DNA of 64,000 bases from assembly GCA_020891255.1 (NCBI GenBank), contig BQFW01000004.1:1984001-2048000 (forward strand), read 5' to 3'. Origin of the DNA: Entomortierella parvispora E1425. Its lineage: Eukaryota; Fungi; Mortierellomycota. Positions 7,149 to 15,937 of this stretch are shown here, piece after piece (positions within the stretch are counted from its first letter, which is position 1; the number at the start of each line of letters is the position of its first letter). A program made the translations under genes and the position numbers. Under the pieces are notes generated by a model that had not been told where the DNA came from, did not search any database, and worked only from the letters and a program-made list of their open reading frames with translations.

Positions 7149-10100
7149 ATGGGCTCATCTTCAACCGTCATTGGAGGTGAATACCTGGTCCTTGGCAAGA
7201 TTGGCGAGGGTTCGTTTGGTGAGGTCTTTCGAGGTAAGACTTGCAACAATTAGGATCAGAAAAAAAAAAAAAAAAAAAAAAAAAAGAGGGGACAAATGTG
7301 TCAATCCTTCACGTAAACTGGTGCCTTTGCTTCAGTTCTCTTGGAACTCGCGATGGACAGGTCGACAGCGAAACATGGCAGGGCAGCAGACACAAATGCA
7401 GTTTTACCTTGTTCCTGATCGATATCGATGGGATGAGGATCTCTCAATTGCTCGTCAGTTGATCCGACTGTGATATGAACAACTATGCTGATGCTCTCTC
7501 CTTTTCTCACACACCATCCTCTCTTTTTTTTTTTTTTTTTTTTTTATTCACGCCATTCACAGCCACCCACCAGGCTACCGGCGTTGACTATGCAATCAAG
7601 CGCGAGCCGATTAATGTTGAACATCCTCAGTTGGGGCACGAGGCCAAGATGTACGAGCGACTTGCTGGAGGAGGTACAGTGACCCTTTCATTCAGCATTT
7701 ATTTCTGTCTTTTTTTCTGTTGTCAGTGCACCCATGCACCCAGGCATCTCGAGCCCTCACGTTTCCTTCCCCCTCGCCAAAGAAAAAAAGGGTGATCGGT
7801 CATGAAAACAAAAGGTTACCAGCCAACCAACGCGTGGGTTCGCCTGTGGTGTGAGACTACTACTGTCAACAATGGTGAGAGGACTTGTCCCTTGATGCGA
7901 TGTGTGCGCACAGTCCCTCTGTCTCAGTGTCCCTCTGTCTCAGTGCGGTGTGGGTCACCTCAAGGGCTGGAAGAAATTGTTCAAAACGACACTACTGGAA
8001 CGGATCAACTACATCACACTAACAAGCCTCCCACGCCAACTCTGCATGCCTCTATAGCTGGTATTCCTCGTATGCATTGGTATGGTAGAGAAGGCTCCTA
8101 CAATGCTCTGGTCATTGACCTCCTTGGGCCAAACCTGAAGCAGGTGCGCCGTGAGAACGAGAAGTTTCCACTTAGTTTCGTTATTGAGCTTGGAGTACAG
8201 ATCGTAAGGATTGTGTTCACTCTTTTGTTGTTGTTATTGTTGTTGTTGTTGCTGTTGCTGTCCTCCTTCGTTCATCTGACCTTGCGGACCAAATTCGTTG
8301 TACGCATAGATTACTCAACTAGAGTTTATTCACAAGCAAGGGATCGTCTATCGCGATGTAAAGCCCGAGAACTTCTTGTTGGACGACAGCATCGTGTTCC
8401 CAGAGGCTCCGGCAGGCAAGACGCTCACGCCACCAATCTTCCCAGATCATATCATGAGCTTCTTTAACGATACTCGCCGGCGCCAGCACAGTATCGAGTC
8501 TACTCACTCGACCCTCTCCAACCTTTCCTCGTCGCCAACTTCCCCCATTCTGCTGGGCTATGGCAAGCCAAAGTTGTTCATTGTTGATTTTGGATTGGCA
8601 ACGTTTTACCGCGATCCTTCTGGAAAACATATGCATGGCAGGGGTACCGTGAGGCACAAGGTTGGCACTGCTCGATATGCCAGTCTCAACATTCATAACG
8701 GACGAGGTACTTTATTAATTGAGATGAACACTCCTGTCGTCATCTCGAATTGAATGCTAACTAAAGATGTCCCAACTTGTCTTTCATAGAGCACTCTCGT
8801 CGTGATGACATCGAGTCAGTAGGATACATGCTTTTGGAATTCCTTATTGGAACACTGCCTTGGTCTGGGATCGCTGCCAGGAACTCCAAGCAAGGATGGG
8901 CAAAAATGAAGGAAATTAAGGAAGAGATTGAGTTGGATGAGCTCTGCGAAGGTCTCCCTCGGGGGTTTATGACGTTTATCGGATATGCTCGTGGACTGGT
9001 GTTCGATGAGGAACCCGACTATGACTACCTTCGAAAGATACTGACTTCTTCAGCTGGACGTGGAGCTGAGGCACAAACAGTCCGATTTTACAGAGAGCCT
9101 GCTGGTGGAGTGTCGCGGTCGCTCGAGAATTGCTTCAGCGGTCTCCATATCCAGCAACAGCATCCCGCAGCCCCTGCCCAGGAAATTCCTATCAAGAAGA
9201 GCGATCCTTTCAAAACAAAGGAACGTGTGAAGGATAATCCTCTGGAGAACTGGCGCAAACGTCCTCAATACGTGCCAGCTGAGAAAGCCGAGTTCCAAGA
9301 CTACAACCCAGAGTCGCTGTGGACGACCACACCGCCAGACGTGCAAACCTCTGGTGAATTCTCGATTGTAGCTTGCAATGGTGATATCCAAGAGGACCTC
9401 AAGGACCAAATCGATTGGGAGATTGTGCCGGAAAACGGTGGTGAAGTCGACCCGTCTCATAACTGGGGTGAGGTGGACAAGCAGGACATTACCGAATGGG
9501 GCCATGATGATGGCGCTGACGCAGGAACTGTACAGTCGGGCTTTGGTAGTTACCCTCCGTTCAACGTTGGATCATTCCCTGGCGATTCTGCTGCTGAGCT
9601 GATTCCGCACAAGGATGCTCGACCTGGCCCTGATGGCCTGGGGCTTCAGTTTGCTCGGCAATCGCAGCATGCACCTCAAGATGCTAGACTTTACTCGAAC
9701 GAGCCACCGTTTGGCCTTTTGCCACCATCGGCTCGCGTCGCCGCTTTTACCGCACAGGAGCCTTCTGCAGCATCCACTGTCAACGTCGCTGCATCACAAC
9801 CGTCATACACGAGAAACCGTCAATATTCACGCGAATATTCTGGTCGACTGGGTATCGACACATCCCTTGCGGCACCAGTTCATCCTTTAGCTCGCGACTC
9901 TGCCGCGACAAAAACCGACTATCCTGGACATCACTCGCTTTCCCCAAAGTCTCTGTCCTCCTCATTCTCGTCCATAAATGTGCGTTCTGGCCAGGAGGTG
10001 GAGCCTGGAATTGAGCATTCGCAACGCGGATACCCAGTCGAGGCTAGTAGTCCCGTCAAAGTGGGTGGCGCTCAACAACATCATCCATCCTATCATGGCT

Positions 10101-10777
10101 CTCAAGATCGTGCTCATGGACGGTCCCATCGTCCCGACAATGGTTGGGAAGGAGACAGATTGAACCGGGATGGATCTCAAGACGAACACCCTTCTCATTA
10201 CGGTGGTGGACACCGAAGTGGCAGCGAAAACTGGCAGTATCATCGCCAGCATCCTCAGCCACAACATCCGTTTGACAACCGACGCGATCGGTGGCGACCT
10301 GCAGGAGGAGGCAGACCTGGCCCCGCCCATGGCTCTATTGACGGATCAGTGGATAGTCATGAATGGAATCATGGTCGTCGATCGAGACAAGTCTCTGCTC
10401 CAGGAAGTCGATTCCAAGGTGCACCATCCCACCCGAGCCCCAATCCCAACTCCAATAACGCCCCACCGCTGCCTTTGTCTGGCTCCCAGCGACCCCAGTG
10501 GGGGATCCCACCATTTGGCAGTGGAGGCGGGCACCATCCACCATCGCAGCAGCAGCAATCATACCCACCAAAATATCATCGTGCGGCCGAATATGATCAA
10601 AGCCACTCTCAGGGCGGAGGAGGGTATGGCTACAATAGCTACAATGGTGGATACCGCGACCAACGACGTCGATCTTCTCGATCTCGTAAATGTTCCAACA
10701 CGAGTCTTCAAGAGACTTTCAAGAGCAACAACATGAACCTGGTGAAAAACGGCGGCAGTCGTGTGCGGCCCAAGTGA
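7149..10777 (+). CDS. Casein kinase I family Ser/Thr kinase with a kinase-domain insert and a long disordered C-terminal tail
   Basis: Five exons: 7149-7233, 7563-7673, from 8058, from ~8310, and from ~8791 to 10777. Motifs: IGEGSFGEVF, YAIKRE, HPQLGHE, GIPRMHWYG, VIDLLGPNL, YRDVKPENFLL, DFGLA, GTARYASLN and SRRDDIESVGY. Confidence 0.93.
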
Positions 10778-11369: not shown

Positions 11370-14300
11370 TCATGGCCGACCTACTCCCGCACCAAGAGTC
11401 TCTACCCGTTCCAGCAACAACACTTCATCTCCGTCTTCACCTTCATTCTCACCCTCATCCAACATGTCATCCTCCTCTTGGCCATTAATATCATCGCCAC
11501 CATCCTTGTGATCTTGTTCAAGTCGAACCTTGAGTGGGCGCATCGAAGGCAACCCTTCTTCGCCGGCCGTCCTCAATGGTCGAGGAGGGTGTTGATCCTG
11601 ACGCAAGTCCTGAAGGGCCTGAGTTCGCGCTTGGTTCATCTTGTGTTTTTGTCGTCGACGCTCGTGGATCCTTCCTTGTTCCTGAGCCCATTTCGCCACG
11701 GACTCTTCTCGCGTTTTTCGCTCGTCCTGCTCTCCTTCCCGCGCGCCCAATGTCCCTTCTTGGAGATTCAGACCAAGAGTTATCCCTCCCGCCGAAAGAA
11801 TCTCCCCTCGGACCAAGCTCAGGGTCGAGGCTTTGTCGTCCTGATCCTCAGGCTCGGGAGAAGGGACTCTTACTTTGTCACCGCCAGCGCCATGGTCGTT
11901 ATTTTGATCTCGTTTTACCATGACGGAGGGCAGCATCGTTGTCCTCACCGCAGTATGTCCTGCGACTGCCACGGGAGATGGCGGCAAATTGAATAAATCG
12001 TGCGAGGACTTGTAAGCCGAGATAACAGGGTACTGATGATAGTGATGTTCCTCCTCAAAGGCAGCATCAACATCCATAACATCTTCCACCGCCCTGGCTG
12101 GCTCGATTGCCGCATGATATTCTTTGGTCGACGGGGGTAGATTGAAAAGGTCGTGCGAGGACTGATAGGCAGAAATGACGGGATTATGGTGATGATGTTC
12201 CGCTTCATAGGCTTCGTCGACATCCATGATATCCTGGACTGCCTCGGTTGCAGCAGCAACTGCTTCCGACGCATGCGATTCGTGAGAAAGTAGCCTGGCA
12301 GAAGAAGGCATCGGATAGTAGGCTGGTCCACGCGCTAGATGTTGGACGGGTCGCGTTGGTTGAGCCACTTTTGTTTTGGTGGCGTCATGGTCCGGGTCGA
12401 CTTCTCGGATCCTGGTGGCGCGGACTGCATCCTCCGAGTCAGAACTACGATCTGAAAGGAAAGCGGTTTTTGTACTTGGGGTCAACAAAGGTGACAGCGG
12501 TGGAATGGATGAGGAAGTGTCACGCCCAGGATCGGTTTCACTAGGGGGATAGGGCGTTGGAGGTCTTTTTCTTGGGGGTGTATCGTTGGAGCGTTGATCC
12601 GAAAAGAGAGGGTGAGCCTGTTGTCCAATCGTGATCTTCTGCTGCGATCTTGTTCCATTCGAGAGAGTGGGTGTCACCATCCCAGTCATGGTTGACTTGA
12701 TTTGCTGTTGTATGCCTGTCACATCTCGAAAAATACTCTCTGTGGCATTTGGAGGTCGCTGAGAAATGACTGTGTGCAATATGGCTGGAGTGGCAGGAAA
12801 CTGGCGCAAAAGCAACTCTGTCTGAACCGAAGCCTCCATCTGAGCAACAGAATGTGGTAAAGATGACGAGGAGGACGTTGCTATGAGCTGTGGCAAAGAG
12901 TCGGTTTCTCCAGAGGAAGTGACTGTGGCAACACTGAACGTAGTGGCAGTGGTTGTAGCTCGCGATAGTCGGCTATCTCGGCTACTGATTGTCGTTGGCG
13001 GTGCAATTGAGATTTCAGGCACCGTTGCAGGAGCGATTACAAGGTGGCTTTGATATCCTTCGGCTTCGTCGTCTGAAGTCCTTGGATCATCTATTTCCAC
13101 GAGATGGGGGTCCTCGGGTCGAGGGTCTGATGGCTCGTCTGCGGTCTGGGGTATATGTGGAGTCTCTGGAGGAGATCTTGGTCGAGATTCTCGCGAGGCG
13201 CCGTTTGGAGACCGGAGAAGTCGAGGCAGACGCTCCGGAGAATCGCAAAGCGGCGCTTCCAAAATAGACGGTGGCTGGCTCTGGTGGAGAGAATATTCTG
13301 AGTTCCTGGACGGTTGGGATCCCAGACGTCCAACGAGACTTGCTGCACCAGGTTGTCCAGTAACGTCAGCTCGGCTATGATTCTCCGCTGTAAGTGCTGC
13401 TGCTGCTAGGGCCTCACTGGATGCTCCTCCTTGCTGGCTGCTCCCGGATCTGCCTTGAAGTTGGGTAGAGCGTATACGTTGAGTGCGACCTGATTGTCTA
13501 GAGTGCGACGAGCTCTGAGTTAAACGTGGTCCAAGCTCAGTTGCTATCTGGGAGCCACTCCCAAGGAAACTGTGCGGTGGTTTCGTCGAACGTGGAGAGT
13601 GAGAGTAAGAATGATGTTGCGCGTCCTGGTTATTGTAATCAAGATGGTTTTTGCCGCTTCCGTGACCATACTGATAGTAAGGGGGACCTTGTGGCTGTGG
13701 GTGAATGCGGCTGTCGCGGAAGGGGTATGGCGGTCTATGAGCTGCCCGACTGCCCTCTTTGGCCTTCCCATTAAAGTCATATTTGGCCTTGCACCAGCAC
13801 ATCGAGCTCATGAGGAAGATCCCTGCGATCGCAGCAGGCGTGTAGTTGAAATTGGACCGAGTCAATGGCAATGTCGAAGGAAGCATCAAGATCCCTGAGA
13901 GGAATAAGAGCCAAAGGACGGCAATGATGTTCAGCAGTCTAGAGAATGAGCCGAGTGAGAATGGTCCTGGAACATAACGGAGCTGGCCCTCCTTTGTTAA
14001 TCGCAGCCAGAGTGGTATTACTATATCACAAGAAATCCGCAGGAGTCAGCGTCTTTTGTTCACAAAAACGTAGCTGAAGAACATGAAAGCTTTCAACTTT
14101 TTTTTTTTTTTTTTACCGAAACTCAAGTTTGTGCTGACACAAGCGAGGCTTGCAATCCAGTTGAAAGCGTTGTTGTCGCCCCAGTAGAATGGAAATATGG
14201 CGGACATGCATGCGGCTGTGACCAGCCAGGAAATACGCTGGGCTGTCCTTCTTCGAGGATGGAGATGAGTCCAGTACGAGGATTTTGGAATTCCACCGTC

Positions 14301-15937
14301 GCGTGCGAATGAGAAGGCAACTCTAGTCGCTATTCCAAGGCGAATCAATCCTGTAAAAAAAACAGCCGTAAGGACCAACGATATAAAGACACTTCCGAGT
14401 GCCTTTCCCAAAGAGACCTGTTCAGTAGAAGCAGGCGGTCAGCAACGAACAGCAACGAATTAAAAAAAAAGAGATTGAAAATCACTTTTACGCACCAATA
14501 TGACCCGGACGGCCGGAACAGGTTCGTCCAGAAGTCCTTTCATAGGCAGAAGAATACCATAGTTTAGAGCTATGACTAACGGTAAACCAAGGATAAGGCT
14601 GAGGAAGCTCGTCCCTGCTGTAATGCGTGGAATCGTTCGTTCTGGTCGACGACACTCTTCAGACTACAGACAGACAGAAAAATTGCAAAAGGAGGTTAGC
14701 ACAATCTACTGTCTTTGTCGGCACTCTCGGTAATGGAGTACCAGCCTCTGCTTACCATCCGCACGACAGTGTCTTGAGGACAAAACACAAAAGAGGCCAT
14801 CAATGTACTGCTGAGTCCTGCATATAATGCGCTGGAGCTTCCCGAGTAATTCAAATAGGTCGAGAACGGGATGTTGATGAAAGAGGCGTCGATCGGTGAA
14901 GACATTATGATCAGGTTCGCTAGCGCCACTACGGTTCCCATAATGAAGAGGCCTGTATTCGCTCAATTGTGGTTATTAGAAAGTCATCAGTAAACAACTC
15001 TATCTCTGTGACCAGAGCTGGCACGATTTACTGTCCTTGTTGTGGCTTAACTAACCTCCCATCGTAGAAATATAACCAAGGCCGCGGATAGGGAGCAGGT
15101 TAAAGGCCTGCCAGAACAGCACAGCACCTAGGTGGAACATGACCAGCATCCCCGGAGTAGACGAGACCTTGTGCATCGACAGCAAGATTTGGCCCAGGAT
15201 CGATGAGAAATAGAATGCTACTGAGGATGCTGACGCAACCTAGTGGTTCGCCGCACAATGAGGAACGTTAATATATCTATTCCATTCCCAATAGCATCGT
15301 TTTGTCTTTTGCGTTTTGCGCCGATTTACCGAACTGGCAATGGTGAGCCATCCAGTCAGCCAGGTCAAGAAGGCCCTTTGATGTGCAGACCCCAATTGGA
15401 AAACCCAGTGGTGGATCCCTGCAGTGGTTGGGTAGGCAGAAGCAAGCTCTGCAATACATAGGCTGACAAGTATGGACATGGAACCGACGGCGATATAGCT
15501 CCAAGTTGCCCATGCTGGCCCACCATTGGTAAGAGGAAGACCATACAGGGCAACGATCCCACAGAGAACGTTGCTGGCTGTCACCATTATCCCCATCAGA
15601 GTGATCCATGAAAGCCTCCTGGACAAGACCTAACAAAACCAAGCCGTCAAGCCAATCGGTTAGAGGCTACTAAAGATCAACTGGATGAAAAACAACATTG
15701 ATTGTAGGAGGAACTTGCAGGTTTGTAGCCTAGAGAGATGAGGTTGTAGTCGTCAAGGGTCATAAGAGAAGGCGCTGAGCGGACAACCCTGGTGGACATG
15801 GATGGACGTCCTATGGAGGAATTGTTGTCGCTCGAGTCCGGTTCTTTTTGATATTGAGTCATCATAATTGAAGAACTTGAATACGTTGATGCATCGGGTC
15901 TAAGATATGCTGGCTCGAGAGAATGTAGGGGGTGCAT
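11370..15937 (-). CDS. APC-superfamily amino-acid/GABA/polyamine permease (UGA4/TPO5/HNM1-like) with a ~800-aa C-terminal cytosolic extension
   Basis: Motifs: LGYKP|VLSRRLSW, NGGPAWATW, AELASAYPTTAGIHHW, RVAFSFARDGGIP, GPFSLG and NFNYTPAAIAGIFLMSSMCW. The last exon is open from the acceptor near 14020 to the stop at 11370. Confidence 0.88.

What the first reader, a model, noticed from the sequence alone, without database searches (positions are those of the whole stretch)
11370..13790. Amino-acid permease fused in frame to a ~800-aa cytosolic tail: candidate transceptor
The last permease TM (NFNYTPAAIAGIFLMSSMCWCKAK) continues without a stop or intron into ~805 aa of disordered S/P/T/E/H-rich sequence. 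UGA4/TPO5-type permeases normally end within tens of residues of that helix. Known nutrient sensors derived from transporters carry such extensions (yeast Snf3/Rgt2 C-tails, Ssy1 N-tail). I know of no APC/UGA4-type sensor with a giant C-tail. That it senses rather than transports is inference.
Basis: partly seen in the sequence, partly recalled or inferred. Interest (0 to 1): 0.8.

Follow-up and report, generated by a model that had tools for sequence, protein, structure and literature searches.

The report
Permease with giant disordered tail
A soil fungus (Entomortierella parvispora) and its whole family carry amino-acid/choline-type membrane transporters fused to a roughly 800-residue floppy cytosolic tail studded with about a dozen conserved short motifs; the fusion is real and under selection, looks like the tails of yeast glucose sensors, and nobody has tested what it does.

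Summary
The window comes from Entomortierella parvispora. A seven-exon minus-strand gene (15937-11370) encodes 1339 aa: a divergent ACT-family (TC 2.A.3.4) permease core of 536 aa, then 803 aa in the same last exon with no stop.

This is not chance, and it is not two genes:
- P(no stop) is about 8e-15.
- A relative at 74% nt identity, and M. alpina, keep the same single ORF.
- All 7 indels are multiples of 3.
- Sequence similarity collapses right after the shared stop.
- Tail dN/dS is 0.22: 0.08 in conserved islands, equal to the core, and 0.28 in spacers.

The fusion was found only in Mortierellaceae (at least 9 genera, three paralogous clades, tails about 500-900 aa). Untailed relatives end a median of 22 aa after TM12.

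AlphaFold predicts disorder except for one 55-aa helix. No Pfam, PDB or Atlas match explains the tail. A 35-aa box occurs twice here and once elsewhere, as the signalling box does in Snf3 and Rgt2.

Sensing versus self-regulation cannot be decided. The core keeps the family's universal motifs and is strongly constrained. No RNA run was listed, so there is no transcript evidence. The scan noted the repeated box before, on this same window.

Verdict: a real, undescribed, lineage-specific variant, and a candidate transceptor or regulated permease.

The parts
15719..15937 (-). Exon 1: start codon and the cytosolic N-terminus, ending ...DDYNLISLGYKP
   Evidence: Built. The N-terminus is conserved in L001. 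The junction GYKP^V(L/M)SR is identical in annotated orthologues P0013, P0029, P0035 and P0108. The NCBI model EMPS_03206 omits this exon.
15630..15718 (-). Intron 1, with a GC-AG boundary (donor GCAAGT)
   Evidence: Only this junction keeps the permease frame. The same GCAAGT donor and ttgttag acceptor are present in relative L001.
15330..15629 (-). Exon 2 (TM1-TM3 region)
   Evidence: Pfam AA_permease_2 match. Boundaries fitted to P0001 with the GT-AG rule.
15056..15239 (-). Exon 3
14756..14952 (-). Exon 4
14496..14663 (-). Exon 5
14117..14417 (-). Exon 6 (contains the RDGG.P motif)
11370..14020 (-). Exon 7: TM11-TM12 plus the whole 803-aa tail and the stop codon, as one ORF
   Evidence: The same single ORF is found in L001 (881 codons) and in M. 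alpina L002 (869 codons).
13782..13853 (-). Last transmembrane helix (TM12)
   Evidence: Translation checked. It matches the end of the Pfam AA_permease_2 model.
13734..13772 (-). Juxtamembrane island NGKAKEGSRAAHR (family consensus TGGAKD.SRASHR)
   Evidence: Mean identity 0.90 over 23 tails.
13224..13292 (-). Island ..PPSILEAPLCDSPERLP (consensus QSHPSSILGIPFSESPEMM)
12984..13022 (-). Island VPEISIAPPTTIS; it fits the degenerate P-x-I-x-I-x (PxIxIT-like) pattern
   Evidence: 21 of 23 tails match at this aligned site, against 0.2-0.7 matches expected per shuffled tail.
12720..12752 (-). Island PNATESIF
12540..12566 (-). Island RPPTPYPPS (proline-directed Thr, Tyr)
12279..12320 (-). Island YYPMPSS.. 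(aligned with FPTLDGYPL.KSP in the other clades)
12126..12233 (-). Box copy 1 (DIMDVDEAYEAEHHHHNPVISAYQSSHDLFNLPPS)
11973..12083 (-). Box copy 2 (DVMDVDAAFEEEHHYHQYPVISAYKSSHDLFNLPPS), the copy shared with all clades
11802..11843 (-). Island ..KASTLSLVRG
11592..11756 (-). The only confidently predicted structure: a 55-residue amphipathic basic helix with invariant W, A, Q and I (..VAKWAQEQGRIHERR..ARTQALQDLR..)
   Evidence: AF2 pLDDT 89-96. Invariant columns.
11373..11408 (-). Conserved extreme C-terminus RVETLGAGVGRP
   Evidence: It is lost in the Linnemannia clade-II copies.

Best explanation
The gene encodes one 1339-aa membrane protein. The N-terminal 536 aa form a deeply divergent but intact-looking ACT-family (APC superfamily) permease core. 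From TM12 onward it continues as an 803-aa tail. The tail is intrinsically disordered apart from one long amphipathic helix and carries about 12 short conserved islands in a fixed order. It is inferred to be cytosolic from APC topology. The most likely mechanism is that the tail is a docking platform. Its islands would be short linear motifs that recruit cytosolic enzymes and adaptors to the permease; candidates by pattern only are a PxIxIT-like phosphatase dock, proline-directed phosphosites and a tyrosine-rich acidic box. Substrate-dependent states of the core would then be read out. The readout would be control of the permease's own activity or trafficking, a downstream nutrient signal (transceptor), or both. 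Shown here: gene structure, conservation of the fusion across Mortierellaceae, purifying selection on the whole tail and core-like selection on the islands, and predicted disorder. Inferred: cytosolic location, docking function, identity of partners, and any signalling. My confidence in the anatomy alone (one real fused protein) is about 0.93. The confidence figure given with this explanation is for the docking-platform mechanism.
For: - One ORF, not chance.
- The same uninterrupted last exon occurs in a relative at 74% nt identity and in M. alpina.
- All 7 indels are multiples of 3, and identity drops to 39% straight after the shared stop.
- dN/dS: core 0.078, tail 0.22, every 60-codon window 0.10-0.40; islands 0.080, spacers 0.28 with bootstrap range 0.22-0.35.
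- A profile search of 1.84 billion representatives finds only 31 relatives. The 10 looked up by name were 9 Mortierellaceae and one unnamed Logan sequence; the long ones tested carry AA_permease_2, and P0011 and P0027, which start at or after TM11-12, do not.
- Every protein of 683 aa or more with this core is from Mortierellaceae, in 9 or more genera and up to 1482 aa.
- The tailed clade is monophyletic with three subclades, and some species hold two paralogues, so the tail predates the duplications.
- The islands are ordered, conserved, and make up about 20% of the tail.
- AF2: the first 504 aa of the tail have mean pLDDT 48 and no secondary structure; the last 330 aa have mean pLDDT 57 with one helix at pLDDT 89-96.
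- The core keeps the motifs shared by all ACT-type relatives.
Against: - There is no transcript or protein evidence for this genome, because no RNA run was listed.
- No island matches a curated domain or family, so all partner assignments rest on pattern matching with short degenerate motifs.
- A disordered tail under purifying selection could also serve as a spacer or tether rather than a dock.
- Some annotated orthologues have shorter tails or lack the C-terminal motif. Those may be model errors or real losses.
Confidence: 0.55

Rival explanations
1. True receptor or transceptor. The core binds an amino acid or amine, and the tail transmits a signal to a transcriptional or kinase pathway. 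This would be convergent with Snf3/Rgt2, with the 35-aa box acting as a signalling box.
For: - The tail is about 35 times longer than in untailed relatives.
- The tails diverge except for short boxes. [quoted passage not shown]
- The core sits on a long stem branch and is at most 30% identical to any untailed permease.
- Many subfamily-conserved residues in TM1, TM3, TM6 and TM8 are replaced.
Against: - The core is as constrained as a working transporter (dN/dS 0.078).
- The universal motifs are retained.
- Replacement of subfamily residues is equally high in HNM1-like transporters, so it is not diagnostic.
- There are 2-3 paralogues per genome.
- There is no homology to Snf3/Rgt2 or Ssy1 tails and no identified partner.
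- The adjacent CK1-like kinase is not syntenic in other species.
Confidence: 0.3
2. Structural tether or spacer. The long disordered tail with its terminal helix and C-terminal motif anchors the permease to a cytoskeletal or organellar partner, or to a membrane domain such as the hyphal tip or a contact site, with no role in sensing.
For: - Spacer length is roughly kept at about 700-900 aa in most full-length members.
- The spacers are still under purifying selection.
- The best-conserved structured elements, the helix and the extreme C-terminus, sit at the far end.
Against: About a dozen conserved islands are spread along the whole tail rather than only at the end. Some clade-II members have lost the C-terminal motif but keep the islands.
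Confidence: 0.12
3. Artefact. Either these are two genes or an unseen intron or polyadenylation site ends the permease after TM12, or the tail is a non-coding read-through ORF.
For: There is no RNA evidence. Three of four M. alpina strain annotations split the gene, with models that start inside TM12.
Against: - Those split models still begin within TM12, so the ORF is continuous.
- Coding signatures run through the whole tail and stop at the shared stop codon.
- The fusion is kept through at least 9 genera and three paralogous clades, and in both NCBI-submitted and JGI gene models.
Confidence: 0.04

Closest known systems
Yeast glucose sensors Snf3 and Rgt2 (MFS transporter-like receptors)
   Same: A 12-TM transporter-like core is followed by an unusually long cytosolic C-tail. 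The tails differ from each other except for a short conserved box whose copy number varies: two in Snf3 and one in Rgt2, against two in Entomortierella and one in other genera here (for the yeast facts).
   Different: The superfamily differs (MFS versus APC/ACT), so any likeness is convergent. The tail here is 2.4-3.8 times longer (803 aa against 337 and 213). It has about 12 islands rather than one box type. There is no sequence similarity, and no signalling partners or loss of transport are known.
Ssy1 of the SPS amino-acid sensor, and the transceptor Gap1 (YAT family, APC superfamily)
   Same: These are APC-fold permease homologues used for amino-acid sensing. Their cytosolic extensions or tails mediate partner binding and regulation (established knowledge; reviews PMC4238866 and PMC6423903 were listed).
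   Different: Ssy1's extension is N-terminal and much shorter. Gap1's tails are short. Both belong to the YAT family rather than the ACT family. Here the extension is C-terminal and about 800 aa long.
Uga4, Hnm1 and other ACT-family permeases (TC 2.A.3.4, TIGR00907)
   Same: This is the best family match. The N-terminal DDYNL.SLGYK signature, the AE..S.YP, EE and RDG..P motifs, and full-length coverage of AA_permease_2 are all present.
   Different: Identity to any untailed member found is at most 30%. The score is far below the TIGR00907 cut-off. About half of the positions conserved in the nearest untailed subfamily are replaced. Those proteins end a median of 22 aa after TM12.
SLC12 cation-chloride cotransporters (APC fold with a large C-terminal domain)
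   Same: They have an APC-fold core with several hundred cytosolic residues after TM12. UniRef labels the window protein 'Amino acid permease/SLC12A', which is an InterPro domain name.
   Different: The SLC12 C-terminal domain is folded (established knowledge). The tail here is predicted disordered and gives no Pfam hit.

Membership tests
APC superfamily / AA_permease_2 (PF13520) | Significant full-length match to the family profile | tested here: met
   The window exons hit PF13520 at 8.8e-08 and 5.7e-06. Full-length orthologue P0013 scores 1e-36 over model positions 3-426 of 427.
ACT family, TC 2.A.3.4 (TIGR00907) | Score at or above the curated cut-off of the subfamily model | tested here: not met
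   TIGR00907 is the best NCBIfam hit, at 243 bits (P0013) and 220 bits (window protein), but the cut-off is 598 bits. The protein is related to the ACT family yet is a separate deep branch.
ACT family, TC 2.A.3.4 | Sequence motifs shared by all ACT-type relatives (N-terminal LGYK, AE..S.YP, EE after TM6, RDG..P, W/P in TM11-12) | tested here: met
   These columns are retained in all six tailed sequences examined.
ACT family, TC 2.A.3.4 | Transport of an amino acid, choline, GABA or polyamine | not testable with these tools
   An uptake assay is needed.
Transporter-like nutrient receptors (Snf3/Rgt2 type) | A long cytosolic tail absent from transporting relatives, with a short conserved signalling box | tested here: met
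   803 aa against a median of 22 aa. Conserved boxes lie within otherwise unalignable sequence.
Transporter-like nutrient receptors (Snf3/Rgt2 type) | Homology to Snf3/Rgt2 (MFS sugar-porter core) | tested here: not met
   The core is APC/AA_permease_2, not MFS. Any likeness is analogy only.
Transporter-like nutrient receptors (Snf3/Rgt2 type) | Ligand-dependent signalling through the tail; little or no transport | not testable with these tools
   The substitution test on the core was not diagnostic.
SLC12-type APC proteins | A folded C-terminal cytosolic domain | tested here: not met
   AF2 mean pLDDT is 48 and 57, with a single helix only. There is no Pfam hit on the tails.
Calcineurin substrates with a PxIxIT dock | A P-x-I-x-I-T-like motif in a disordered region, conserved among orthologues | tested here: inconclusive
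   PEISIA and its variants sit at the same island in 21 of 23 tails, with 0.2-0.7 matches expected by shuffling. Degenerate functional instances such as PQVLVS exist (PMC5328617). Binding has not been tested, and the island's conservation extends beyond the motif.

The most novel reading that the evidence does not exclude
Mortierellomycota possess their own family of APC-derived nutrient receptors. These would have evolved independently of the yeast SPS sensor and be convergent in design with the MFS-derived Snf3/Rgt2. A ligand-binding permease core would control an 800-aa disordered tail whose repeated 35-aa box and PxIxI-type islands recruit signalling enzymes. That would amount to a previously unknown amino-acid or amine sensing pathway in an early-diverging fungal phylum.
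Probability: 0.25. Interest if true: 0.8.

Novelty: new variant of a known kind. Interest (0 to 1): 0.55.

Why it matters
Nutrient sensing by transporter-like receptors is understood almost only from budding yeast, and how early-diverging fungi sense amino acids or amines is unknown. Mortierellaceae are abundant soil and plant-associated fungi and include industrial lipid producers.

This family is phylum-restricted, present in several copies per genome, and strongly conserved. It gives a concrete, testable candidate for such a sensor or for a new mode of permease regulation. It is also a clean natural example of about 12 short linear motifs kept in order within about 800 residues of disorder over the diversification of a whole fungal family.

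On the practical side, many public gene models cut this gene in two or drop its first exon.

Tried and rejected
- **cDNA-like contigs.** I looked for them among Logan and metagenome hits. L001 and L003 are genomic: introns are present and the ORF starts at the last exon. That gives no transcript proof.
- **PDB sequence search of the core.** Nothing was found at E <= 0.01, either with a single sequence or with profile A3.
- **Pfam on four tails and on the window tail.** Nothing credible came up.
- **ESM Atlas on the C-terminal module.** Best score 0.66, uninformative.
- **Lost-transport test.** The tailed clade keeps only about 51-55 of 102 columns conserved in 45 untailed relatives. I rejected this as evidence for lost transport, because HNM1-like transporters in the same set keep only 37-44%.
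- **CK1-like neighbour as a functional partner.** Rejected as conserved synteny. M. alpina and L. elongata have GDE1 there, and D. globulifera has a methyltransferase.
- **Motif readings considered and not adopted.** I weighed bZIP, P-loop (GAGVGK), MIM, PPxY, YPxL and clathrin-box readings of the islands from memory. None fits consistently across the clades, so none is claimed.
- **Box regex.** The first regex was faulty and was corrected.
- **Fold search.** Not run on the AF2 models, because confidence was too low to be meaningful.

Full report
**What is there**

The window is from Entomortierella parvispora; the tail's 100% hit is NCBI EMPS_03206. On the minus strand I built a seven-exon gene:
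- exon 1: 15937-15719
- exon 2: 15629-15330
- exon 3: 15239-15056
- exon 4: 14952-14756
- exon 5: 14663-14496
- exon 6: 14417-14117
- exon 7: 14020-11370

It encodes 1339 aa. Introns 2-6 are ordinary GT-AG introns of about 80-100 nt. Intron 1 needs a GC-AG boundary (donor GCAAGT). That donor is conserved in a relative, and the resulting junction GYKP^VLSR is the one found in annotated orthologues. The public model (1216 aa) starts at an internal Met and lacks the first 123 residues.

Exons 2 and 6 match Pfam AA_permease_2. TM12 is at 13782-13853 and is followed in the same exon and frame by 803 codons.

**Is it more than chance?**

Yes.
- With the local base composition, a stop-free run of 803 codons has probability 7.7e-15, and the other two frames hold 21 and 36 stops.
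- A soil-metagenome contig from a close relative (L001; 74% nt and 66% aa identity in the tail) has the same last exon as one 881-codon ORF ending with the same twelve residues.
- M. alpina has one 869-codon ORF.
- All seven indels between the window and L001 in this exon are multiples of three. Straight after the shared stop, identity falls to 39% and the gaps are not multiples of three.
- Nei-Gojobori dN/dS against L001 is 0.078 for the core and 0.22 for the tail, and 0.10-0.40 in every 60-codon window of the tail, with dS about 0.5-1.4.
- Splitting the tail by conservation gives 0.080 for the islands, the same as the core, and 0.28 for the spacers (bootstrap 0.22-0.35).

The entire tail is therefore translated and under selection.

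**Distribution**

A profile of six tails searched against 1.84 billion cluster representatives gave only 31 hits. Of the 10 looked up by name, nine are from Mortierellaceae and one (a Logan sequence) has no name. Eight of the ten longer hits scanned carry AA_permease_2 at their N-terminus; the two that do not, P0011 and P0027, are tail-only models that start at or after TM11-12.

A search with the permease part, restricted to long proteins (683 aa or more), returned only Mortierellaceae. The genera are Podila, Mortierella, Haplosporangium, Linnemannia, Benniella, Lunasporangiospora, Gamsiella, Entomortierella and Dissophora, with lengths up to 1482 aa.

A search for normal-length relatives shows a gap. 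Mortierellaceae fragments are 41-77% identical, and after that nothing exceeds 30% (basidiomycete, plant and Ktedonobacteria APC proteins, 'related to HNM1').

In a maximum-likelihood tree the tailed proteins form one clade (SH-aLRT 100) on a long stem. The clade has three subclades. M. alpina, M. antarctica and L. hyalina each have members in two of them. The tail therefore predates these duplications. The window gene groups with M. alpina P0004 (71% identity in the core).

Both word-index searches scored only the 8000 candidates sharing most words. Long-tailed ACT proteins with unrelated tails in other phyla cannot be excluded.

**The core**

The best NCBIfam model is TIGR00907 (TC 2.A.3.4, amino acid/choline transporter family), but at 243 bits against a cut-off of 598. 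No PDB chain is reachable by sequence, even with a profile.

Of 102 columns that are at least 80% conserved in 45 untailed relatives, the tailed clade keeps 50-55. The fixed replacements lie in the TM1, TM3, TM6 and TM8-10 regions. Leave-one-out controls show that genuine HNM1-like members keep only 37-44%. The replacements therefore mark a separate subfamily, not loss of function. The motifs common to all relatives are retained: AE..S.YP, the EE pair, RDG..P, and conserved P, W and G residues in TM10-12.

**The tail**

It has no hydrophobic segment and a disorder-type composition. AlphaFold2 with 24-sequence alignments gives these results:
- First 504 residues: mean pLDDT 48 and no secondary structure.
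- Last 330 residues: mean pLDDT 57, with one helix of 55 residues at pLDDT 89-96 (window 11592-11756) and a weaker helix before box 1.

An E-INS-i alignment of 23 full-length tails shows about a dozen islands, in the same order in all clades, covering about 20% of the residues:
- a juxtamembrane TGGAKD.SRASHR
- SILGIP.S.SPE
- PEISIAPPTT
- P.NA..SIF
- R.PTPYP
- a ..YP.. island
- the acidic, tyrosine-rich box D.D..Y.EEY.H.YPVIS ... LF.LP
- a short island before the helix
- the helix, with invariant W-A-x-x-Q-x-x-I
- the extreme C-terminus E(S/T)LGAGVG(R/K)

The box is present twice in the Entomortierella lineage (the window, L001 and P0008) and once in most others. The two window copies share 28 of 35 residues but only 12 of those 28 codons (72% nt identity).

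The island PEISIA fits the degenerate calcineurin-docking pattern P-x-I-x-I-x at the same aligned site in 21 of 23 tails. In some clades two other islands fit it as well (PVISIS, PS(I/V)EVE). Shuffles predict 0.2-0.7 matches per tail. Functional docks as degenerate as PQVLVS are documented (PMC5328617). This is a lead, not a finding.

No Pfam family or ESM-Atlas cluster explains any part of the tail.

**Interpretation**

Shown: one conserved protein made of a constrained permease core and a long disordered tail, whose short islands are as constrained as the core.

Inferred: the tail is cytosolic (standard APC topology) and acts as a docking platform.

The design is closest to Snf3/Rgt2. Their tails (337 and 213 aa) differ from each other except for a 25-aa box present twice in Snf3 and once in Rgt2 (PMC10876965). 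That is analogy across superfamilies, not membership.

I cannot separate a signalling role (transceptor, about 0.3) from self-regulation of activity or trafficking, or from tethering. An artefact is very unlikely (about 0.04).

No paper in the searched library mentions such a protein. Database entries are 'hypothetical protein' or generic permease names. I class it as a new variant of a known kind.

**Limits**

No RNA run was listed for this genome, so transcript continuity is inferred from evolution only. Partner assignments are pattern-based. Substrate, localisation and signalling are untested.

Noticed in passing
window 7475-10777 (+), NCBI gene at L006 14703-18331: Convergent with the permease gene, and about 590 nt from its stop, lies a protein kinase gene (Pfam Pkinase, 908 aa model). 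Its exon fragments read like casein kinase 1 (..HPQLGHEAKMY.., ..IVDFGLATFYRD..GTARYASLN.., ..SRRDDIESVGYMLLEF..). It has its own low-complexity tail of about 590 aa rich in Q, P, G and H. CK1 works with Snf3/Rgt2 and Ssy1 in yeast, but this adjacency is not kept in M. alpina, L. elongata or D. globulifera.
   Followed up: partly
In E. parvispora a GDE1 gene is reported some kilobases before the window. This could be inherited synteny, or a hint that the substrate relates to choline or glycerophosphodiester metabolism.
   Followed up: partly
window 15630-15718 (-): The first intron of the permease gene uses a GC-AG boundary (GCAAGT donor). The donor is conserved in relative L001.
   Followed up: yes
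window 15330-15937 (-): The public model EMPS_03206 starts at an internal Met (MSILVSL...) and omits exon 1 and most of exon 2, which is 123 residues including TM1. Three of four M. alpina strain annotations instead cut the gene so that the 'tail protein' begins inside TM12.
   Followed up: yes
P0108, P0011, P0017, P0113 (Linnemannia clade-II copies): These copies end at PLKVLLEKDDDD... and lack the otherwise conserved terminal ..LGAGVG(R/K) motif. JGI models from Gamsiella (891 aa) and Mortierella sp. GBAus27b (1049 aa) have shorter tails. These may be real losses or model truncations.
   Followed up: no
window 14100-14116 (-), inside intron 6: A run of 17 A sits directly after the intron 6 donor (GGTAAAAAAAAAAAAAAAAAAG). 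L001 has a shorter A-run at the same place.
   Followed up: no
A similar MLKL-like gene was noted by the scan a few kilobases before this window, which suggests regional synteny.
   Followed up: no
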